DNA of 64,000 bases from Pelomyxa schiedti (taxonomy: Eukaryota; Protista; Evosea), in the NCBI GenBank assembly GCA_020536535.1, contig JAHLWZ010000511.1, positions 1 through 64,000 on the forward strand, written 5' to 3'. This document shows positions 3,189 to 60,602 of this stretch, piece by piece. Positions within the stretch are counted from its first letter, which is position 1; each line of letters opens with the position of its first letter. The notes below the pieces were generated by a model, which did no database searches, was not told the origin of the DNA, and worked only from the letters and a program-made list of their open reading frames with translations. Position numbers and translations under genes: made by a program.

Positions 3189-6050
3189 ATGAGCCAACCA
3201 AACAGTAGTAGAGGTACACAAGTGGGAGGAGTAATAACAACCGATGGTGCAACAGATTATTCAGGTTGAGTCATTTTGATACCTTTCGCGAATTCTTACT
3301 TCTTCTTGTGACAGGTAAAAATCTTTCAAGCTGTGACAAAGGTGCTTCTGGCGCTGGGGTGGATTATGCAGTAGGTGAGGGGTTGCCCCAGACTGGTGGT
3401 ACTCCTGGGCAACCAGCAAGCACGTTCTACCCCTACAACATGTCTGGCTTCAGGGGGGCCGCACTTGTCATAGCTAACTCCGAATATGTGAGGTTACCCA
3501 ATCTTAATGGATGTGTCCATGATGGAGCCCTGGCTGCTGCAACTTGGAGCAAGCTTGGTTATCAAGTGGAATTAAAACAAAACCTAACTGCAGAGGGCAT
3601 AAAGTGTGCTATTGCTGAACTGTGCAACCGAGCCGTCAAAGAGTGGGACTCTGTTGTGGTGCACTACTCTGGTCATGGCACCAGGGTGCCCATTACATAC
3701 GAAGGATGTACCCATGGAAAGAGTAATGACGTGGACGATGCTGTGATTGGTGTTGACGGTGACGCCAACGCTGGAGTGAGTGTGAAGGAAATACTGGATC
3801 GTTTCATGCCCAAAGTAGCCCCCCTGCTTGCTGCAAGGCCTAAGATCTTTGTATTTGATTGCTGCAGAGGGGCCGCAGCAGAGAAGGCTTGTCCTCGTGG
3901 GGGTACCGTGGTAGACAACCACCTTGCATCGGTGGTGGCAACACTGCCCGACTACGCCGACATGGTGATAGGCAATGCCTCCCGCCCATACCACCTAGCG
4001 TTTGAGACCAAAGGAGCTGGGATCTACAGTGGGACTCTGTACGGGTGCATGGATCAGAACATGTCCTCTAGTAACCCCGTCGACCTGCTACGGGTTCTTC
4101 AACTTACAAATGACACAATAGCACAGTCTTCTCAAGAAAAGAACCTCGTACATCAGAGCCCTAACTTCTGCAGTTACCTCAGGAAGGATGTGTATGTCGG
4201 CTCCAGGGAAGTGCATGCAGAATCAGCACGCGGCTCAGTTCCAATCGAAACCACAACAAGCACCAGCATTGAGGTGGGTGCTTCAAAGCCCCGTGAGAAC
4301 AAACGACCTGTGCCCCAACATTCGGTATTTGTGTTCAGTGACCTGCACCTTGGTGCTTTTCCGCCTGTACGTGACCCTGCCAAATGGGAGCAACGTGACC
4401 TTCCCGATCAAAATGTTGCGTTACTCCAGGCACAACTGAACAAGTGGAATTCAGAAATCTGGTTTCTCACAATTACTCTTTTTTTTTTTTCTAATGTTGA
4501 GTTGCAGTGGGCTGTCATTATCAGTGGAGAGAACTGTTGTTATGAATGGGGACATATTTGACTTTTGGGCACAAGTATTTCCCCCTCCCCTTTTTATCTT
4601 CACTCAGGAGCCCTTCCTTATTCTTCTTTGGCAGCCTCTTGATGTGCTGTTTACAACTATAAGTGACATAACATCTGAAGAGACTATGGCCGTCATCCCT
4701 GAGTGGGGTCAACACCTTACTTTGGCCTGTCACCTTTTTAAGGATACAGTCCTTCAGTTGCATGTTTGTTTTTTTTTTTTTTACTTTGGAATTTTTTTTA
4801 CTTTGGCTTTTTTAAAACATAACTTGGCACAGAAAACAGGAGTTAAGTTTATTTACGTTAAGGGGAACCATGACATGACCGTTACGGAAGTTCAGCTGCA
4901 AGAATTCTTTGGTGAAGTTCCCATTGTGGTAAAGGAGGTGTGTTCTGTCATTGCACTGGCTACAGCCACCTTCCTCGTCTTTGCTCCTTCACTGTTCTAA
5001 CTTCTGTCAAGGATTGCCACCTTCTGCACCTGCAAAACAAAAAATACATTCGGTTTGAGCATGGGCACGCAAAGGACGCATTCAACGCCCCTGTGAAAGA
5101 TAAACACCTCCGGTGCTTGGATATCCTCCCTATTGGGTATCTTATCACTCGTCTGCATGCAACGAACTTTGAGCAGACCAGCTCTGTAAGGGACATCGTA
5201 CAAGAAGAAATCTTGGTTTGATGGAGACAATTTCCATTCGGAATTACCCACTTCATTTCCAGAGACTGGTGAAATCCGGGCTTCCAACCTCTTTAGGCGA
5301 TATACTAAGAACCATCATCAAATGTACTGTTGAAGCTGTGTCAGGAAAGAAAATTGCACAGTTGGCTGAAGAGCAAATCAAAACACCACAGGGGATCATG
5401 ACCGTTGTGTGTAACACACTCCTTCTTTGTCATCTATGTATCACCAATCTATCCTCCCCTGATAGGGTCGCGCACTGCCACTGCTGGAATACGCTATGGT
5501 GTCACAAGTTGAATCGGTACGAGCCTATGTAGTAAATTAAGAAAACCAAGTAAAACAAAACAAACCATCAACGAAAAAGATGCTTGGGCCAGAATTGGAG
5601 CCTCGGTGTGCTGAAATAACGAAAAAAGCCAAGCACAAGTTTATGGAGTTTTTGCTCAGTGCGCACCCTCTTCTTCCACTGCTTGCAGCTTGTTTCTTTG
5701 ATGAAAAGTATCCAATCCACTCCTCTTTTACAACTCACAGTCAATACTTCTAGCTATGGACACAGCCTGTTGCAGAATGACGCAGAAATAGAAGCTATTG
5801 TCTTTGGTCAGTAGTGAACTGCATGCAATGCACAGTGATTTCACACACTTTTAGGGCACACCCATGAGTGCTACAGTGATAGCCTGAAGCATCAGCAGTA
5901 TTTCAATGATGGTGCCTGCTGCAAAGGTGTTTCGGCAATCCAGCTAGACATCCGGGAATCCAAGGTTGATATTTTGTCTTGGAAACCTCCTCTCCCAGCT
6001 CAAACCTGTTTTTTTTTTTGAAGGTTCATGGATCATTTCGGGAGGACTGA
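3189..6050 (+). CDS. Caspase-fold peptidase C14 (paracaspase/orthocaspase-like) fused to a calcineurin-like metallophosphoesterase
   Basis: Protease motifs AALVIANSEY, HYSGHG (His), FVFDCCRG (Cys), AFE and HQSP. The same ORF continues into FVFSDLHLG. Spliced exons then give NGDIFDFW, VKGNHD, RFEHGH and VFG|HTH, i.e. all five metallophosphoesterase motifs. ATG at 3189; likely stop TGA ending at 6050. Confidence 0.85.
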
Positions 6051-24717: not shown

Positions 24718-26180
24718 TTATGTTTGTGCCCAGTGCCCAGCAGACCATAAACAGCCTATGACTATATTTACCACTGTGAACAGAAGTGCCACAACTGCAC
24801 CAACAACTCTTTTGCTGTAGCCTATCACCCTCAATGATATGAATATTCCAACAGCTGGTAAAAGGAAGGCAACAATCAGACTCAAAGGTCCACAGAACTT
24901 TCTTGGTGAGGCCAGGGAAACTACGGCAGCAACAAGCAACAGAAAAAACAGTGCCACCACAAGACCATCGACTAGAATGAACAGCCGCGACGAAGTTGTG
25001 GACCGCTGTACAATGATGTCAAAGAAACGGGGGAGCATTATGGGATGGGGGGAGGGCAGCACAAACCTGAGGCACAGATACATTGTAATCAGGTGAAAGT
25101 TGGAAGAGAACACGGCACACATTTCCAATATAAGCTGTGCTCAACACCATGAACACACCCTGGAGGAGGCGCCAGCATACCCACAACAAAAACAACCACT
25201 GAGCCGTGTGCCCATGTGGCGGCGCAATGACAATCCAGAAGTAGCCGAGTGCCAAGTTAAAGCAGCTCCACATAGACAACGCAAGTGCACAGTCTGTTGT
25301 TTGTTGCTGATTCCTCCATGGGCAGTTCCAGTCCCAGAACAGTGCAATCACAAACGTGATGAGACCAAAACTGTAGGATTCTGGGTGAGCCACCAGAGCA
25401 ACCTAAAGAAAAGGGAAGCTCCGTGATTCTCATATAAAAGTGTCAGTCACAACACACCAACAGGATAACATTGACAATGAGCAACACAGCCCACAAGGCG
25501 AGTGAGACAAGCCTCTTTGGACGCGACTCACACAGTGTCAAAAGAGCAGTGGAGCCTCGGAACCCTCTGGTGTGTGGTGTCAGACAACAACAGGATTAAA
25601 TGATGCAGTCAGTACTCACGTGTCAATGTATTGCTTGACAGAACACAACTTTGGGAGTGACGAGCTGCTCTCAGAGAGCAGGAAGCAACCCAGCGCGAAT
25701 CCCTTGAGAGACATCAAAGTTCCGTTCTGTTCCTGTTGAACCATGCTGGATATGCTGTCGATTTGAGACGGTGATGCATTGTGGTGGTTTCTCCACTGTT
25801 GTTTGACATCATCCACGGACACCAACTGCTGCTCTCCCTCCCCTGCGCAAAGATACGCAACAAATGAGACATCTCACCAACAGAAATCGACACAACACAC
25901 AGCTCCCCCAGTCAGAATAAAGAAGTAACAGTGGTGTGTACCTTCTTTGTGCCCAGGATGACTTTCAAAGAGTTCGCAGCACTCTGTCCACACCTCAGAG
26001 GGGACCAACGAGAACATGGGACGTCCGCCGGCGGCTTCGTTGTTCTGTTTCTGCTTTTCCTCGACAACAACAACCTCGTTGAGGTCAATGGTCACCTCTG
26101 GAACCCCAACAACGAGGTTGGTCATTGGGGAGAAAATTTGTGTTCTGTTCGAACAGATCAGCATTAGCAGAAACATGGCC
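24718..26180 (-). CDS. Hypothetical multi-exon membrane protein, possibly disrupted
   Basis: Several minus-strand ORFs (25874-26176, 25616-25825, 25019-25393, 24718-25128). The distal ones carry multiple hydrophobic TM-like stretches. Exon joins are not resolved. Confidence 0.4.
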
Positions 26181-26237
26181 CGAGGGTGCTGCCACCAGTG
26201 ATGGTTGAATCAGGAGGTGGAGGTAGCGAAGTGGGAC

Positions 26238-28003
26238 TCAGTGGGTTTCATCAGGACCATTTTTTGAAAATCGTGCCCTTTTTGCTGCAGTTGCCTTAGC
26301 TTTCTCACACTTCTTCTCAGCTTTTGCTGTGGCCTTGGCTGCATTCTGAGCCAACAAGCCAAGATACTTCTGGTGATTCTTCAGGTCTTCGTCATTCATG
26401 TTGTTCAGTCTTGGGAGATTCAGTGTGCAGTATTAAGGGAAGAAAGGCAAACTTGATATTTTCATTTATCAGAAGTATCCTCACATCCACATCTGTGTCC
26501 AGTGTATCTAAAGCAAAACGGTATGGTATTAACAATGATGTCCATAAAACTGTCATTCGGCCAAAGAATTGTTCAACAACAACACTGTGCTCATTGAGTG
26601 TTTGCAGAGAGATATTTGGTTTTTAAAAGTACCGCTTCTTTTTCAAGGCAGCTATGACAGGGTCAGCATGACTCTCTCGTGGGATAGCAATTTTATTTAG
26701 CCTGTATGTCAAAGTTAACTTTGACACGAACTTGGGAAAAGAAATACCCGCTGGGTTCAGGGCCAATATACCCGGAATCAAATAAAGCAGCCCAGGTTGG
26801 TGGGTTGGGATGTCTCTGTAGTTCCTCAGGGCTTTTCCGCAGCAGTGGCTTGTACAACTCCCAACAGGTCTGAAGATCGGCATAGTCATGCCTTGCCCCC
26901 TTGCACCACTTCCCAATGCCACGTGCATAGTAAGGATGAGTGGCCTGCACAGCAACATGCTTTTTAGCAGCATGGAACCCGTGATGTGCATCAAACATTT
27001 CAGCCTGTGTGGCCCATGAACCAGAGGGCTTGTTCACAATAATGGGTGTGTGGTCCCCAATAGCGGCTATGTAGGATGTTTGATCAGTGGGGTCAGGGTG
27101 ATGTATAGGAGGGTTTTCAATCCACCTCCGCCACAGAACCAACCTTACATCCTCTCTGACCCGCTCAATGGCCTTCAGGCAAGATTCCCAGAGAGCCGCT
27201 GGAGAGCTGCGGTTTTGTACACAGAGGAACCATTTGATAGACACATAAAATAGAGCAAAACAGCATCAGCCGTTGAAATCTGTGGCTTCTTACCACGGCG
27301 GCCATAGTCAATCCGGGGCACAACATCGTTCAGGAAGGAGTTGAACCAATACACATCAAAATGTACAATAGTGAAAAAGGCCTGCAGCTGCAATTAAAAC
27401 GGGAATAAAGGCAAAGAGACACACGAAACTGCAGGAGAAGCACGAAAAGTTGGCCATAGTCCTTTTTCTGGCTCAAGAACTGTTGTATGGGCAAGTGGAG
27501 CAGCACTCAAGATGCGATTCACCTGCTGTTGATGCCTGAAGGACCATCTTAGTAATAGTCTATTGTAATTGGAAATGGAACTACCTCGTCATTAGCTCCT
27601 GCACATTTGCTGGGAGATTGGCATCTGCAGACCCCAGCCTTGCTCTGTCTTGTGAAATTGGTCTGGCAGATGTTGATGTGGATGCGGTGAGGGTGGGTGT
27701 TGAGTTTTGTTGTACATTCCTGCGTCTTCCAGACTGTGGAACTATAGGCTGCTGCACCAATGGTATGACAGGGATCTGCTGTTGTTGCAGCTGCTGCAGC
27801 AGTGGTGGTGGTGCCTGTTGTGACCCCAGCAAAGCTGATCCTCGCTGCTGAGGTGGTGGTGGCTCAGTCCAATGTTGATCTGAAAAAGCTGAGGTACCAG
27901 ACATGAGGTACAAATCCTGGGAGATTGCCAACTGCCTCTCATCGAAAGAATACTGAAGTGCATCACCACAAGCTAGGGGAAGCACGTTGGCAATGTCGTT
28001 CAT
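26238..28003 (-). pseudogene. PIF/Harbinger (HARBI1-like, DDE_Tnp_4) transposase/nuclease with an in-frame stop
   Basis: Motifs AIGDHTPIIVNKP, HHGFHAAKKHVAV, ARHDYAD, LFDSGYIG and HSVVVEQFFGRM. An in-frame TAA at 26623-26625 lies before the catalytic Glu. Confidence 0.8.
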
Positions 28004-29334: not shown

Positions 29335-30801
29335 TTAGTATTTGCCTTCTCTGTTGCGCTTCTGGGTGTTGGTGGGAGCAGGGATCATGAGTCTCTTGCA
29401 CCTTATGGTCCTGGTTATGGTGGTGGGGGTCCCACTTCCAGCACTGTCAGCTGCAGCACTAGCAGTGGTAACAGTGGCAGAATTGGGCTCAGTGTTGATT
29501 GGGGTACCTGTGTCAACATGCCAGTGGGGAACCCCCTCTGTGCAACCATCACTGCTCAAACCACTTTCAGAGGCGGTGGCTGCTCGTATTTCCTTCCACT
29601 CCAGTTTTCCTTGCCGGTCTTTACTTGGTGTCTTTGTGATGTGCTGCTTTGATGCAAAGACAGCCTGAAAAAACTGACGTAGACCTGGCCTTTCAAGAAC
29701 CACTGGGGGCAAATGCTTTTCCTTGACCTTGCCATGCAGTTGTGAATACAAACTGCTGAGCGCCCCAGATTCTGCGTAGGTGCAATAGCAGATGTTGAGT
29801 TGGAGTGCACTTAACATTGCACCTTTCCACACATTGCCTGGTCGTGGACACCCAAGTATATTGGGAAGACCTGTGCTACGGTACAGAGCGTAGCATCCCA
29901 AACATGGTCTTTTTGTGCCAGCAACAAGGCCATCAGGGGATGTCACACACTGCAAAATTTCAATAAACCTTTGCTCTGCATGGATGCCTGGGCGGCCATG
30001 AACACAATGCAAAGAGTCAGGATTCAATTGTTGCAGTGTATCCAAGATGCTAGGAACAACTGGCTGTGAGGGATCAATGGGATTGAATTTATTGTCACAT
30101 GTTGCAGAGACCGTGAGAGATGGCCCATGTGGTGTGGCTTTAAAGACTTTGAATATGGCAGCTATGATTCCCATGTCTCTCTCTGATGCACCTTCCCAGT
30201 AGCCCTTCCCACTTGAACGTTCTTCGAAGAAGGCCATAGAACGGTAAAGCTTTTTAAACATGCGGATAAGATCTGATTTGAACCCCCCAATGCCGGGCAA
30301 GGTACTATTCCGAACATCCATGCCATCTTGCATTAGAGTGTAGCCACCACTCTTAATTCCACTGAAAATCGTGTTTGCACCCTTTGTATCATTTGCAGCC
30401 AGAAATACATGGTACCTGCTGCTATCAGGGGTTTCTCCTAACTTCAGAACCATCATCTGGAGTTCATCTTCTTCACAGCCCCACGCGATTTTTGCCCAAT
30501 ATAAAAGAAAAGTGCACATGTGTCGCATGAACTGGCAGGCTCTTCGGTTTGAATAAGAAGCAGGTGTGCGCTCCACCCTGTCTGATGCCACGTATCGCCC
30601 TGGTTGGTCCCTCCCCTTTTCAAAATTATCCACCACACTCGCCTTCAGATCTTCCGTCAGGTCCTTTGACAGATACTCACAACTGCGGACACGTTCCTCC
30701 AGGGCCGCAATGAGCTTGACCACTGTGTCACTTATCACCCTGTCGTCGACCGTATCGTCTACCGTTTCACCTACAGTTGTTTCTCCGTCGCTGTCGTCCA
30801 T
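29335..30801 (-). CDS. Intronless zinc-dependent nucleic-acid/nucleotide deaminase-fold protein (OTT_1508/toxin-deaminase-like), 488 aa
   Basis: GIHAEQRF (HAEQ at 29971-29982) and VAGTKRPCLGCY (PCLGC at 29893-29907) match the HxE...PCxxC motif. Upstream VFLAAND strand. Confidence 0.8.
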   Translation of the reverse strand: MDDSDGETTVGETVDDTVDDRVISDTVVKLIAALEERVRSCEYLSKDLTEDLKASVVDNFEKGRDQPGRYVASDRVERTPASYSNRRACQFMRHMCTFLLYWAKIAWGCEEDELQMMVLKLGETPDSSRYHVFLAANDTKGANTIFSGIKSGGYTLMQDGMDVRNSTLPGIGGFKSDLIRMFKKLYRSMAFFEERSSGKGYWEGASERDMGIIAAIFKVFKATPHGPSLTVSATCDNKFNPIDPSQPVVPSILDTLQQLNPDSLHCVHGRPGIHAEQRFIEILQCVTSPDGLVAGTKRPCLGCYALYRSTGLPNILGCPRPGNVWKGAMLSALQLNICYCTYAESGALSSLYSQLHGKVKEKHLPPVVLERPGLRQFFQAVFASKQHITKTPSKDRQGKLEWKEIRAATASESGLSSDGCTEGVPHWHVDTGTPINTEPNSATVTTASAAADSAGSGTPTTITRTIRCKRLMIPAPTNTQKRNREGKY

Positions 30802-39114: not shown

Positions 39115-40497
39115 GGTTGTATGTTCAAAATTGAGGGTAGTGACTGCTATGTAGGACAATCCTGTCCAATTCCTTTTCATCCATTCCGGCTGGATGTACA
39201 ACCAAACGTAAGCGGAGGCATGACTTCACCACCAGAAAAGATGACACATGGCGAGACTTGCTTTGACGGAGCATCCCTCTTGCCAATAGGTTCTTATTTC
39301 ATTTGTTAACTATCGTTGAGCTTAACACTTATTCTTATTGATTTTTGGGTGGAGAAACTGCTTGGCACCGGCTCAAATGCTGCTGTGTTCGAAGTGAAAT
39401 TCCAAACCACAACATACAACTACAGCCTAACCCGTTCCCCATCATCATTGACTTCGTGTGCGAATGCCTGTGCTTCAGATTCTACAGCAGCAAAAACAAG
39501 AGACATGGTGATGAAGATCATTTTCAACTGGGAGAACGCACCCCAGCAGGCATTGTTGCAGAGCAAATACATGACTGAGTGTATTATCCTCTCATTGGTT
39601 CCGGATCACCCAAACGTGATCCACCCTCTTGGTGCTTTGGTCATCCCTTGGTATTTCCCCTCTTGCAAAATGGTACCTTTTTTCAACTCCGCCACAGCCT
39701 GCCAGCTGAGTTTGTGGAGAAAATACCAAGTGACAAAATGTATTTCAGGGAGAAACTGGCCAACAACAAGTCATTGGCCATCGTGATGCCCCATTGTGGG
39801 ATCACCTTGTCATCGTTCTTCTCGTCATCATCCTCCAGCAACAATTTGACGGTTGAAGGTGCATGGAATCTGTTTTTTCAAGGACTCCGTGCCATCTGTC
39901 ACATCGAGTCACATTTCGTCGTTCACAGGTTTGTTCCCAATTCCCACTCGATGACCAACACTGTAACAAAAACACAGGGACATAAAGGGAGACAACATTC
40001 TCATTGATCCAGAGACTGGAAAGCTGACACTGATCGACTTTGGTGAGTCTCAGCACTGCCCAAACATGGAGGTACATCTGTCGGCCATGTCACTACCATG
40101 GGGAAACACTGGCACGATGCCACCAGAGCTGAGCGTTTTTCTCAAGAGGATCACAAGGGGAACAAGTGGTGTGTTCTCATACTCAAAGTGTGACTCCTTT
40201 GCACTCGCCCTCACCTTCTGGAATGCCCTTCTGCCACAGGCCCACAGGTTCATTGGGAGTTCAATGAACCACGACATGAGCACGTTCAACACACAGTCAC
40301 TTCTCAGCCACTTCCCAGTGCCTTTGTTTTCTTTGGCAAGGTCACACCCACAACAACAGGCGAGGGAATCACCACAACAACAAACACGACAACACCAACA
40401 TGACAGCGTGCTCGAGTCAGTGATGATTGGGATGATGAACCCTGACAAAGCAGCCAGGCTCGGTGCTGCTGATGCCATCCATGAACTCACTTCTTAG
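39115..40497 (+). CDS. Ser/Thr protein kinase domain with PINK1-like motifs, possibly the 3' end of the giant gene
   Basis: LLGTGSNAAVF, VMKII, HPNVI, VHR|DIKGDNILI, LIDFGE, WGNTGTMPPEL and YSKCDSFALA. The junction at 39208-39355 is unresolved. Confidence 0.8.
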
Positions 40498-40716
40498 AAG
40501 ATCGTCAATTCATGATTGCCACTCTTTTTGTTCCACAACAGACATGCCAGTAAATTGGTCCCCTTTGTGAAATCGTCCAACTCCTTCACTCGTGAGTGAA
40601 AACGCTCCATATCCGCTGTTGTTGTTACAATGCTGTTACGTCCGAATCGATCACCACGCTTATTCTTTGAATTCGATGTGTACCAAGTCCCCAAGATAAT
40701 TAAAAAGGAAACCGTC

Positions 40717-41494
40717 ATGGTGCGAGCTGTTGCAATATACTCCAAAGACGTCTCCAAAACAGCTCCAATCGAACTCACACCAACATGGACATTCAATGAG
40801 CTTGCGAGGGCTATTTCCTCACAGCTGGGCTGGCAAGTGGGTTCGGTTTATTTTGGAAAACGCAAAAGGTTGTTTTCTACCACCACTGTTGAAAAGACTT
40901 TAGCAGAGTACCACCTTGCAAATGATGAAACAATGCTGTGTGTTGTCCTCGAATGTGACGGAGGTCGAGCTCAGATTAGTTTTTCCTCAGTGCCTAAGAT
41001 TCCCAGGTGTCGGTTTTGGCTTCTCCACAATGAAGACCATTAAGACCTGTTCATGGCAGCCTGCTCCCAAGTGGCGTAACCATATACCTGGTAATCTATT
41101 CCATTATCTTGATGTAAAGCTTATCAAGCCAAAGGTTTGAATCTGGAGGGAACATGTGCGTCACCCCTGTCTCAATGTGAGGCCTCAGGAAAGAGGGTCA
41201 TTGTACCTTGTGGTCTGGGCACGTTTGACATTGGGGAATGCTCCTCTGAGGCAAAATGCCCTATCTGTCATCAGTCTCTTGTTGTTGAATCGGTGGATAA
41301 CTGTGCTGTGAACAACTGGTGCGTGTCACGCAAATACTTGAGAAAACTAACTTGTGATAAGTCATTGGCAATACATTGGATCTACCAAAGGCCGGCGACA
41401 GGAAGATAGTGGAACAGTAGGAAATGAATGTGGTTGGTTTCCAACTGACACTGTTCAGTGGAGCTACCTCAAGATCACAACAAGAAGCTGCTAG
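40717..41494 (+). CDS. Ubiquitin-like domain (ending LECDGG) plus C-terminal Cys-rich putative Zn-binding domain, 215 aa
   Basis: Exons 40717-40963, 41007-41090, 41135-41318 and 41362-41494 (648 nt). Ubl features TFNELARAI, KTLAEYHL and GG, then APKWR...PGLNLEGTC...C...GLGTFDI...CPIC...NCHW. Confidence 0.75.
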
Positions 41495-41597
41495 AGTCAC
41501 AGTTAGCTGCACCAAGTCTAACCCCAATAACTCTCTGAAACGCTCCTGGAGCGAAGGTGTCTCAGACAATTTTATTTTTATTACAGTGACACCTGGG

Positions 41598-42669
41598 TTA
41601 ATTTCTTGTCACAGTAATAGTGGCACAGCAGTAGGAGTACTTTTCCAGGGGGACCATCATGGGTGAACCACCTCTTTCAGATACTTTTACTCCTTTTGTT
41701 GTTGTAACAAGGAGACTCCAACTACTGTGAGCTGAAACAGCTGCGAAGGGGTTTGAACATGCGGTTCCACATGAGCAGTTAGTGAACTCATATAGAACCT
41801 GCTGAACCCGGAAAGTTCCATAGCCATGAGTGGCAAAAATTGGCTTGCCACACCCACAGCAAATTCCTAAAGTGGTGAGGCCAACTGCATTGGTACAAAG
41901 GCCAAGCCTGGAGAGTACCCCAGAAAATTCAACAGAGTATGGCAGAGTGTCCACAATCTGCACGCACTGGGCAGTGGTTGTAGAGTTGAACGTTTTGGCA
42001 ACTGAGCAATTCACAAGATGAAACATATGGGAAAGGGACTGTTCCTTGCCAAGTTGTTGAACGAAGGCTTGGAGAAATGGGCTGCCCTCTGTGGTTCTCC
42101 AAGCATAGTGTGTTGGTGTTGTTGCGTAGGCAATAAAAAAGCAATGATCCACTGTGAAGTTCGTTCTCCCATCTGCCACCGCGAGGTTCGTTCTCCCATC
42201 TGCCAAAGGTGTATTTCCATTGCCCCTGCAAGCTTGAACGAGAATTATTCTAGGCTTACGGTCCAATGAACGGCAATTAGAAGTTCGGAACTGATCAGAG
42301 ACCCACTCCAACGGTACGGAAGAATCGTCACTACCATAAATCTGTGGTGACACGAAAGCAATTAAATCGAATGATTTTTTTGAGATAGAAAGTGACACAA
42401 CAAACCACGTTGTTGCCGCCATGGCTTGAGAGAATCAGAACGAGACAGCCCACCTGCGAGTAATCCTCTTTACTTGCAGCAGCGATCGCGCGCCGTATCG
42501 CTTCCCCCGTCAAGGCGCCAGCCGACGTGGACACGCTGAAGTTACGGTTCTCCAGTGCCGGGCGCAAGGCGTCTACGTCCCGCATGGCACCATCTCGCGT
42601 GTGCGTGTTACACACGATGTGGGCGCGTCCGTTCCATATGTCGTATGTTGTTTCACCTTCGCCTGTCAT
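41598..42669 (-). CDS. Animal-type caspase (C14A-like, QACRG) without a prodomain, with a C-terminal Cys-rich domain, 335 aa
   Basis: Exons 42406-42669 and 41598-42341. Motifs TRDGAMRDVDAL, LILSSHGG, FRTSNCRSLDRKPRIILVQACRG, FFIAYATTP and YAWRTTEGSPFLQAF. Confidence 0.9.
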
Positions 42670-42834
42670 TATTCCTTCAAAGTTCCGGGTTGTTTATTTC
42701 ACTTGGTGCTTGTTTGACGAGGATTGGCTCAAGACGAAAGGCTTTTTTTGGGAAGCACTGACAGGCTGAATGGCATTGATGTAGATCTTTACGATGCATT
42801 TAAAAATTGATCATCACTTGTAGCCGTATCAGAG

Positions 42835-44010
42835 ATGTGCGACGACGCAACAAGGAAGGGAATAGCGTCGCCACCAGAGCACGTGGCGTGGGCACGCCAC
42901 CAATTCGTTGCATTTTGCGTGGTGAGCGCCGCGCCTCGTTGCGCGGCGAAAAGCTTCCTCGCGGGGATTCCAAACAACGTTCTGGTGGACGAAATAGGCA
43001 GGAGGTGGATCATGGGCGTGAGCAGGCGGGCCGTCGTCGGGAGTTTGTACCGGAACGGGACAGGCCAGGCCCGCGGTGGGTACTGGTTCGTGAGTGTGTC
43101 CCACACACTCGGAGTGGTTAGAATATCCTCCGAGTTGGGAGTGAAGCCGTTCGGCGATGTGATCATGGGATGGCTCGACAGGAACATGGTCGTTTCAGTG
43201 AAGCCCACTGGGAAGGAAAGGTGTCCTGCCATCACGAGGTGGCCTTCGGGAAGTCTCAAGGCTTGCTTGAGGGAGCGTTACTCTTGGGGTTCTATAATTA
43301 CAAAGTTTGTAAGAAGCCGCAGTTGGGCTGTGGTGTACACACCCGGGAGGAAGGCGATGGAAATGTGGCCCATTCCGCTGTCATATTACCCTCTGGTTCT
43401 TGTTCCCCTGGGTTCCCAGGAAGAAGAGCTGATGTGGATGGATATCATTGATGGGGAACGGGGAGTTGTGTCTGTGAAGAAGGGTGAGCTTTACTTCCTT
43501 CGGTTCATTGACTTGGAAAAGACATACAAGCTCAGGGTTTTTTCCATTACACGGGAGTTCCAGCTGGACACCATATGTTGCGATGTCTACTTTTCCACCA
43601 AGCATGGAATCATTCTGTCACTTCAGTATCCTCCACCACACAAATCCCGGCAGCCTTCGTGGGCAGAGAGAGAATTCCAGATGGTTATCTTACATCCGAA
43701 CCAAGTGGTAAGCAGAAGCTACTTCATGGCAAGCAAAGTGGATTCGTGGCACTTTGTTCCAGCAGAAGCATGTCCCAGCCGTGGTGAAACCCATGTATAT
43801 TCAACAAATGACTTGGATCATGTATCACAGGTGTTCGTGCATGACCCAGATTCTGTGACCAGAGTCTCTGATGGCCTGATAGCAATCCAGTGCCAAAAAC
43901 ACATTGACCTGCTTGATGCCCTGACTGGCCGTTGGTTGTGGCGCCAGGCTGCCCCTCTTGATACTCAGGACATTCTCTATATGAATAACCTCAGGCTCTC
44001 CTCGTTCTAG
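42835..44010 (+). CDS. Intronless lineage-specific hypothetical protein, 391 aa (intact copy)
   Basis: Full ORF with an ARHQFVAF N-terminal motif. Partial copies lie at 6490-7094 and 50371-50672. Confidence 0.7.
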   Translation: MCDDATRKGIASPPEHVAWARHQFVAFCVVSAAPRCAAKSFLAGIPNNVLVDEIGRRWIMGVSRRAVVGSLYRNGTGQARGGYWFVSVSHTLGVVRISSELGVKPFGDVIMGWLDRNMVVSVKPTGKERCPAITRWPSGSLKACLRERYSWGSIITKFVRSRSWAVVYTPGRKAMEMWPIPLSYYPLVLVPLGSQEEELMWMDIIDGERGVVSVKKGELYFLRFIDLEKTYKLRVFSITREFQLDTICCDVYFSTKHGIILSLQYPPPHKSRQPSWAEREFQMVILHPNQVVSRSYFMASKVDSWHFVPAEACPSRGETHVYSTNDLDHVSQVFVHDPDSVTRVSDGLIAIQCQKHIDLLDALTGRWLWRQAAPLDTQDILYMNNLRLSSF

Positions 44011-59639: not shown

Positions 59640-60602
59640 TCAGAACACGAAGTCACTCAAAACAGTAGACAAGTGTGGTACCTGGTGCATCCCCTGCATA
59701 GATGCCTGCATGTCGTTGCATACGCCAGGCCACACTGTGCCCAGAAGTGAAGCACCAGGCTTGATGTATTTCAGGAGGTGTGCTGTTAACACAGAATTGG
59801 GGCGGATACTGTCACCTCCAAACGAACTGCGTCCAGGCTGGCAACCGTAAAGAATTGCCCACTCCGGTCGAAACTCCTGAGACCTGAGGTCTGCAACAAA
59901 CTTGGCAACAGAAGCATCGTCTGCAGCGTGCGCAATGTTCTCGGCTGGCGGTGTGGCTGTGGCTTGTTCCCCCACTGTTGTGGTCGTGATAATCGGTGCG
60001 CATATTCCCTTGGGAACGGCCTCCGAGCGAGTGGGAGAGAAACGGCACGCGTCAATCAGTGCCAGCACTCTCCCAGCAGCTTTTGGCTTTCCCACTTCAC
60101 CAAGGAACTTGATAATAACATCTCCGACGCGCACCTCATCTCGGTTGCGCATTTGAAGGTAGGTGTGTCCCCCTTCCTGACGACCGTGGCCAGAAAAATA
60201 TAACACCTAAGAAAAGGTGAAACAATGATGGTTTGACGAGAGGGAACGTACAACGCTGGCATCCTTCCCAGTACTTGCAATAGCCGTATCGATGAGGTTA
60301 TAGAAGGCGTTCGAGCTTACGATGTCATCTTCACCGATAATGGTGAAACCGCAAAGTTGAAGTGCTTCTTTCATCGCAGCAGAGTCCTCCATTGAATAAA
60401 GCTTATTTGTTGGGTCCTCGTTACCAATAACAACAGCAATTTTCGGAAAAGGCCCCACAGAGGGTGGAGTAGAAGAAGAAGAAGAAGAAGAAGGCTATGG
60501 GTTGTGAGCCAGGCTTCCAATAGAAAACAAGAGGAAGAATGAGAAAAAGACCTGTCCGTTAACCACTGCCCTCACTTCCACTGCGGAATTGGTGGTGTCC
60601 AT
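59640..60602 (-). CDS. Stand-alone caspase-fold peptidase C14 (paracaspase/orthocaspase-like), 286 aa
   Basis: Exons 60552-60602, 60252-60494 and 59640-60206. Motifs KIAVVIGNED, VLYFSGHG, LIDACR, AILYGCQPG, NSVLTAHLLKYI and HQVP. Confidence 0.88.

What the first reader, a model, noticed from the sequence alone, without database searches (positions are those of the whole stretch)
41598..42669. Animal-type, apparently Asp-specific caspase in a non-animal protist genome
Seen: a spliced gene with the His (LSSHGG) and Cys (QACRG) dyad plus all three S1-pocket residues. These are the Arg in TRDGAMRD, the Gln of QACRG and the Arg in YAWR. Established: these correspond to caspase-1 Arg179/Gln283/Arg341, which confer P1-Asp specificity, whereas metacaspases and paracaspases have acidic pockets and a D-x-C motif. 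FRTSNCRSLDRKPRIILVQACRG closely parallels caspase-3 [23 protein letters not shown]. True caspases are usually regarded as animal-restricted. The 64-nt intron matches its neighbours in style, arguing against contamination. Inference: an effector-like caspase with no prodomain but a novel C-terminal domain.
Basis: partly seen in the sequence, partly recalled or inferred. Interest (0 to 1): 0.92.

Follow-up and report, generated by a model that had tools for sequence, protein, structure and literature searches.

The report
Animal-style caspase in an anaerobic amoeba
The oxygen-shunning amoeba Pelomyxa schiedti has its own spliced, transcribed gene for a protein cutter with every sequence mark of the aspartate-cutting caspases that are usually said to exist only in animals; the enzyme's activity and origin are still untested.

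Summary
Confirmed. The host is Pelomyxa schiedti (NCBI auto-name 'caspase 7'). An RNA contig skips the 64-nt intron and starts 21 nt before the ATG, so there is no prodomain. One DNA contig links the gene to its amoebal neighbours. His83/Cys126 and Arg25/Gln124/Arg170 align with the dyad and Asp pocket of animal caspases. The model (pLDDT 90) matches caspases (Z 29-30) better than MALT1 (22.9) or metacaspases (19.5 or less). A paralogue on the same contig has the acidic Leu/Asp/Asp/Glu pocket instead. A 27-nt duplication gives two Asp-Gly linker sites, candidate self-cleavage points. Corrections: 'effector-like' is not shown by the trees (AU p 0.13; position unresolved), S4 differs from caspase-3, and the C-terminal tail has no RNA cover. 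NCBI splices the tail differently, but the open frame is favoured and resembles the neighbour gene's Cys-rich domain (p about 0.008). It is not the first non-animal case (Reticulomyxa, 2018). The best-scoring relatives are soil metatranscriptome proteins with the same pocket. The genome also holds a second Arg-pocket caspase domain. The scan noted this same stretch before, and a caspase-3-like domain on other DNA of this genome.

The parts
42670..42690 (-). 5' leader; RNA contig begins at about 42690
   Evidence: contig end at 42690 with 11 loose letters that I read (own knowledge) as a template-switch adaptor
42406..42669 (-). Exon 1 (aa 1-88): strands beta1-beta3, S1 Arg25 (42597-42595), catalytic His83 (42423-42421)
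42342..42405 (-). 64-nt phase-0 intron, GT-AG
   Evidence: RNA joint 42341>42406; ends and GC content
41919..42341 (-). Exon 2, catalytic part (aa 89-229): Gln124 (42236-42234), Cys126 (42230-42228), Arg170 (42098-42096), beta6 dimer strand with Val218
42159..42210 (-). 27-nt tandem duplication in the inter-subunit linker, giving two Asp-Gly sites (Asp136, Asp145); candidate self-cleavage sites
   Evidence: linker pLDDT about 52-54; cleavage is inferred
41598..41918 (-). Open-frame C-terminal Cys-rich tail (106 aa plus stop), resembling the neighbour's Cys-rich domain; NCBI instead predicts an intron at 41918-41867
   Evidence: 15/2000 shuffles; 81/20000 open by chance; no RNA cover; no Pfam or Atlas hit
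40717..41494 (+). Tail-to-tail neighbour: ubiquitin-like head (by eye; no Pfam ubiquitin hit) plus Cys-rich domain; spliced and transcribed
3440..4210 (+). Internal control on the same contig: paracaspase-type paralogue with acidic S1 pocket (Leu, Asp, Asp, Glu)

Best explanation
A genuine Pelomyxa schiedti gene for an active, aspartate-directed caspase (C14A-like). Shown: splicing, transcription, no prodomain, caspase fold, intact His83/Cys126 dyad and basic S1 pocket (Arg25, Gln124, Arg170). Inferred from caspase structure-function: it is made as one chain, dimerises through beta6 (small Val218 at the caspase-3 Val266 position, as in stable effector dimers), is matured by cutting after linker Asp136 and/or Asp145 (both followed by Gly), and cleaves substrates after Asp with an S4 preference unlike DEVD. 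More weakly inferred: the Cys-rich tail, shared with the adjacent ubiquitin-like gene, is a docking module that takes the place of a CARD/DED prodomain, and the enzyme works in defence or regulated death next to the amoeba's many D-x-C paracaspase-type genes.
For: RNA joint and 5' end. DNA contig 40452-42878 spans the gene and its neighbours at flank-like depth. Residue alignment meets the pocket definition in PMC2064784. Model pLDDT 90; Foldseek TM about 0.8 to caspase-3/7/8; VIA Z 29-30 for caspases against 22.9 for MALT1 and 19.5 or less for metacaspases. The branch separating all caspase-type rows from the two Pelomyxa paracaspase-type rows has 100/100 support. Soil relatives keep Arg/Gln/Arg and a linker Asp-Gly. 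Contrast with the acidic-pocket paralogue on the same contig.
Against: No enzyme assay. Expression rests on one low-depth contig (5.4) in one of two RNA runs from a single study. The loop before Arg25 is about 8 residues shorter than in animal caspases, and the near-invariant Asp at the start of the small subunit is Cys155 here; either could weaken activity. The tail has no RNA cover and its single-sequence model failed (pLDDT 38). No substrate or activator was identified; BIR and CARD searches were blank, but their controls gave no match over the cut-off.
Confidence: 0.72

Rival explanations
1. Origin A: member of an old non-animal caspase lineage, together with soil eukaryote transcripts and perhaps the Reticulomyxa proteins, so the Asp pocket predates animals.
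For: Best pairwise scores are to the soil proteins P0159/P0014 (284/280 against 239 for the best animal), and these were also the top metagenome hits. They share odd features with it (G-x-A...CN first strand, VNC, AQC). It grouped with them in every quick tree (SH-aLRT 84-95; in one with a sponge row) and in one careful tree. Animal monophyly without it is not rejected (AU p 0.26). No animal protein exceeds about 35% identity.
Against: Bootstrap for that group is only 56-58, and a long-branch glass-sponge caspase joins it. From P0014's side, some animal-type rows score as high as the Pelomyxa protein. The hosts of the soil transcripts are unknown.
Confidence: 0.5
2. Origin B: an old horizontal transfer of an animal (or animal-virus) caspase into an amoebozoan ancestor, followed by fast divergence, a new intron and a new tail.
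For: Very patchy occurrence: nearly all labelled hits are animal. Placement with effector caspases is not rejected (AU p 0.13). Pelomyxa is a phagotroph (own knowledge).
Against: No close donor. Long branch (1.6 changes per column). A second, separate caspase-type domain exists in the same genome. No match in viral contigs and only one fragment in 185,579 prokaryote genomes (pattern-limited searches).
Confidence: 0.35
3. Caspase-like fold and pocket but weak or no activity, or relaxed P1 (Asp/Glu); acts as a scaffold or decoy.
For: Short 179-loop and Cys155 for a conserved Asp. The genome carries dead caspase-like genes (L120 lacks His and Cys).
Against: The dyad and all three S1 residues are kept despite about 67% divergence elsewhere, which implies selection on catalysis (inference).
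Confidence: 0.15
4. Animal contamination or a chimeric scaffold.
For: The genome comes from single-cell assembly (PMC8887013) and the nearest named hits are animal.
Against: The spliced transcript is in the single-cell RNA run; the intron is short with the same GTTTGT donor as an RNA-supported intron in the nearby kinase gene; one contig spans the gene and its neighbours; the tail resembles the adjacent gene; there is no close animal match.
Confidence: 0.03

Closest known systems
Animal caspases-3/7 (MEROPS C14A)
   Same: Fold, dyad, Arg/Gln/Arg S1 pocket, Tyr/Trp S2 residues, QACRG, linker Asp, small Val at the dimer centre, short N-terminus; about 28-35% identity; best PDB match is caspase-7, E 6e-25.
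   Different: Shorter 179-loop and L4 loop, Pro and Thr where caspase-3 has the S4 Trp and Asn, Cys for a conserved Asp, duplicated linker site, probable Cys-rich C-terminal domain; not recovered inside the effector clade.
Reticulomyxa filosa caspase-like proteins (Klim et al. 2018, PMC5982838)
   Same: A non-animal protist with proteins that branch with animal caspases.
   Different: Different supergroup (Rhizaria). Their S1 residues and their relation to this protein could not be tested here, as no sequences were on hand.
Paracaspases (MALT1, Dictyostelium) and metacaspases (C14B)
   Same: Clan CD fold and His/Cys dyad; MALT1 Z 22.9.
   Different: They have an acidic pocket and D-x-C, which is what the paralogue at window 3440-4210 shows and this gene does not.
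Unnamed soil metatranscriptome caspases (P0014, P0159, L033; JGI)
   Same: No prodomain, Arg/Gln/Arg pocket, linker Asp-Gly, an extra Cys/His-rich C-terminal domain; highest pairwise scores.
   Different: Only 31-33% identical; their tail looks different by eye; host unknown; sisterhood has weak bootstrap.

Membership tests
Caspases, MEROPS C14A | Six-stranded caspase fold in one chain, closer to caspases than to para/metacaspases | tested here: met
Caspases, MEROPS C14A | His-Cys dyad in SHG and QACxG | tested here: met
   His83, Cys126
Caspases, MEROPS C14A | Basic S1 pocket Arg179/Gln283/Arg341 | tested here: met
   Arg25/Gln124/Arg170 by alignment (definition in PMC2064784); pocket geometry was not measured
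Caspases, MEROPS C14A | Cleavage Asp in the linker between beta4 and beta5 | tested here: met
   Asp136 and Asp145 are present (definition in PMC4357240); cleavage itself is untested
Caspases, MEROPS C14A | Branches with caspases, apart from paracaspases | tested here: met
   100/100 split; the outgroup is only two Pelomyxa paracaspase-type proteins
Caspases, MEROPS C14A | P1-Asp proteolysis | not testable with these tools
   needs an assay
Caspases, MEROPS C14A | Antiparallel homodimer through beta6 | not testable with these tools
   monomer model only; beta6 region present, Val218 at the centre
Effector caspases 3/6/7 | Clade membership | tested here: inconclusive
   outside the clade in all trees; AU p 0.131
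Effector caspases 3/6/7 | Short or no prodomain | tested here: met
   RNA 5' end 21 nt before the ATG
Effector caspases 3/7 | S4 residues and long L4 loop behind DEVD preference | tested here: not met
   Pro176 for Trp, Thr171 for Asn/Asp, L4 about 7 residues shorter; role of these residues from own knowledge
Para/metacaspases, C14B | Acidic S1 pocket and D-x-C | tested here: not met

The most novel reading that the evidence does not exclude
It represents an ancient, overlooked non-animal lineage of aspartate-specific caspases (Pelomyxa plus soil protists) that uses swappable C-terminal Cys-rich modules instead of death-fold prodomains. Pelomyxa, which holds acidic-pocket, half-switched (Arg/Ala/Arg) and fully basic-pocket enzymes in one genome, would then show that the Arg-to-Asp specificity switch predates animals.
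Probability: 0.4. Interest if true: 0.88.

Novelty: new variant of a known kind. Interest (0 to 1): 0.72.

Why it matters
Papers still state that caspases are restricted to animals and that the Asp-specific pocket was an animal invention (PMC10896300 abstract; PMC2064784). The non-animal exception I found in print, Reticulomyxa, rests on phylogeny and domain matches (PMC5982838, PMC10565124). A small, single-gene, prodomain-free enzyme from an amoebozoan with a complete pocket makes the question directly testable with off-the-shelf caspase substrates. It also puts a caspase in an anaerobe with reduced mitochondria, where it cannot plausibly be tied to a classical apoptosome.

Tried and rejected
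Alternative donor at 42408 (67-nt intron): rejected by the RNA joint. NCBI's second intron: disfavoured, not excluded (52% GC against 34-44% in RNA-supported introns; its tail scores at chance against the neighbour, 681/2000; the unspliced frame stays open for 106 codons, 81/20000 by chance). Searches for more copies of the Cys-rich domain in the genome and in viral contigs were blank, so no profile test was possible. Atlas, Pfam and a single-sequence fold of the tail were uninformative. P0076 and P0107 first seemed kin but lack the pocket arginines. Other QACRG-coding words in the genome: the 29 loci fetched held no other caspase; the remaining 25 were not fetched, but a genome-wide profile search found no further QACRG caspase. 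No paper in the library links Pelomyxa to a caspase (one irrelevant hit). Exons were searched separately by reference; the spliced catalytic domain was used only as the stored NCBI protein P0001; the 335-aa model was never searched or folded whole.

Full report
Observation. The gene lies on the minus strand. Exon 1 is 42669-42406 and exon 2 starts at 42341. Each exon alone hits Pfam Peptidase_C14 (E 4.5e-9 and 4.1e-20) and PDB caspases. A single-cell RNA contig covers 42123-42690, skips exactly 42342-42405 and ends 21 nt upstream of the ATG with adaptor-like letters. The 64-nt intron and the lack of a prodomain are therefore real. Support is one contig of depth 5.4 in one of two RNA runs from one study.

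Host and contamination. The database holds the product as 'caspase 7 [Pelomyxa schiedti]', an automatic name. One DNA contig of run X2 (40452-42878) spans the gene and its neighbours at the depth of the flanks. The intron donor GTTTGT is the same as in an RNA-supported intron of the nearby kinase gene. The window carries intron-rich protist genes (DOCK, MORN, vWA). No animal protein is more than about 35% identical. Contamination is very unlikely.

Active site. In alignments with Xenopus caspase-3, other animal caspases and human caspase-7, Arg25, His83, Gln124, Cys126 and Arg170 fall on the S1 arginine, catalytic His, S1 glutamine, catalytic Cys and second S1 arginine. PMC2064784 defines this Arg179/Gln283/Arg341 triad as the Asp pocket, and says para/metacaspases have Leu plus a downstream Asp, Asp and Asp/Glu there. 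The paralogue at window 3440-4210 shows exactly that acidic pattern, a useful internal control. Of the 26 C14 matches in the genome, most show a D-x-C motif, and this is the only QACRG enzyme found. The AlphaFold model of aa 1-229 is confident (pLDDT 90). It matches caspases at Z 29-30, MALT1 at 22.9 and metacaspases at 19.5 or less (Foldseek TM about 0.8).

Mechanism (inferred). The disordered linker carries a 27-nt duplication that gives two Asp-Gly sites 10 and 19 residues after the catalytic Cys, where caspases are cut (PMC4357240). The soil relatives also keep a linker Asp-Gly. Val218 aligns with caspase-3 Val266 at the dimer centre, which suggests a stable dimer. The most likely working mode is a single-chain zymogen that dimerises, is cut at the linker and cleaves after Asp. 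The S4 region differs from caspase-3 (Pro176, Thr171, shorter L4 loop), so DEVD preference is not predicted. Two deviations could lower activity: a short loop before Arg25, and Cys155 in place of a nearly invariant Asp.

C-terminal tail. RNA does not reach it. NCBI predicts a second intron (41918-41867) and a 59-aa tail; the unspliced frame gives a 106-aa Cys-rich tail. The open frame is favoured. It stays open where shuffled DNA does so 81 times in 20000. The predicted intron is GC-rich (52%) unlike confirmed ones. The tail aligns colinearly, exon by exon, with the Cys-rich domain of the tail-to-tail neighbour (15 of 2000 shuffles reach the score; NCBI's tail 681 of 2000), although the plain pairwise BLAST E-value is only 0.38. 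The neighbour's domain resembles an unnamed rotifer-rich cluster (weak evidence). I put the open-frame tail at about 80%. A role as a docking module for the neighbour's product is a guess.

Phylogeny. All trees separate this protein and the animal caspases from the Pelomyxa paracaspase-type proteins with full support, so it does not group with the C14B-type rows sampled. Its place inside the caspases is unresolved. It tends to join three soil metatranscriptome proteins (P0014, P0159, L033) that have the full pocket and no prodomain: SH-aLRT 84-95 in quick trees, but bootstrap 56-58 in careful ones, with a long-branch sponge caspase nearby. Neither membership of the effector clade (AU p 0.13) nor exclusion from an animal clade (p 0.26) is rejected. 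Ancient non-animal lineage and old horizontal transfer both remain open; I lean to the first (about 0.5 against 0.35). Pattern-based searches found no viral relative and one fragment among prokaryote genomes. Reticulomyxa, MALT1 and Dictyostelium sequences could not be added.

Second caspase-type domain. Contig C406 (L004) encodes a domain with both pocket arginines but Ala for Gln, followed by a D-x-C paracaspase-type domain. It does not group with this protein.

Comparison with the literature. Caspases are still described as animal-only (PMC10896300 abstract; PMC2064784), but caspase-like proteins branching with animal caspases were reported in Reticulomyxa (PMC5982838, PMC10565124). I found no paper on a Pelomyxa caspase. 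It works like an animal caspase by every sequence and fold test I could run; formal membership of C14A lacks only the assay and the dimer test; membership of the effector subfamily is not shown.

Method note. The spliced catalytic domain was used only as the stored database protein P0001, and the 335-aa model was not searched or folded whole.

Verdict. Real, host-encoded and well supported as an Asp-pocket caspase outside animals; a new variant of a known kind, with untested activity and unresolved origin. Interest 0.72.

Noticed in passing
L004:1087-2115 (G000:C406, about 26130-27160, minus strand): Second caspase-type domain in P. schiedti with both pocket arginines but AACRG (Gln to Ala), followed by a D-x-C paracaspase-type domain; possibly one tandem protein with two specificities.
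   Followed up: partly
window 3266-4561 (+): Intact paracaspase-type protease with an acidic pocket but a caspase-like PKIF motif; its relative L120 (C165) has lost His and Cys.
   Followed up: partly
window 59640-60443 (-): Third C14 gene on this contig, D-x-C type.
   Followed up: no
window 42828-43935: RNA contigs (several mismatches, probably from a paralogous copy) skip introns whose ends read CT..AC or TT..AC, that is, spliced on the strand opposite the 391-aa plus-strand ORF 42835-44010; the family has further copies at about 6632 and 50184.
   Followed up: no
window 29335-30801 (-): 488-aa ORF with HAE and PCxxC motifs that look deaminase-like by eye; no Pfam hit. It sits beside a 2047-aa MORN ORF, a vWA ORF, a kinase, the ubiquitin-like gene and the caspase.
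   Followed up: no
L029, L032, L033 (JGI contigs of about 1.1 kb, 33% GC): Prodomain-free caspases with the full Asp pocket and a Cys/His-rich tail, of unknown eukaryotic host.
   Followed up: partly
L030, L031, L124: Environmental caspase-like proteins; P0076 (ubiquitin fusion) and P0107 have lost the pocket arginines and may be intermediates between para- and true caspases.
   Followed up: partly
L122 (GCA_029979705.1): Gene-dense, intron-free contig with a divergent QACRG caspase and unannotated neighbours; possibly viral. Observed only.
   Followed up: no
L121: Caspase-MORN fusion on a 373-kb eukaryotic metagenome contig among ASC, TIR and UCH genes; host not identified.
   Followed up: no
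L113: Fragment of an animal-like caspase in an Ekhidna MAG; probably host DNA in the bin.
   Followed up: no
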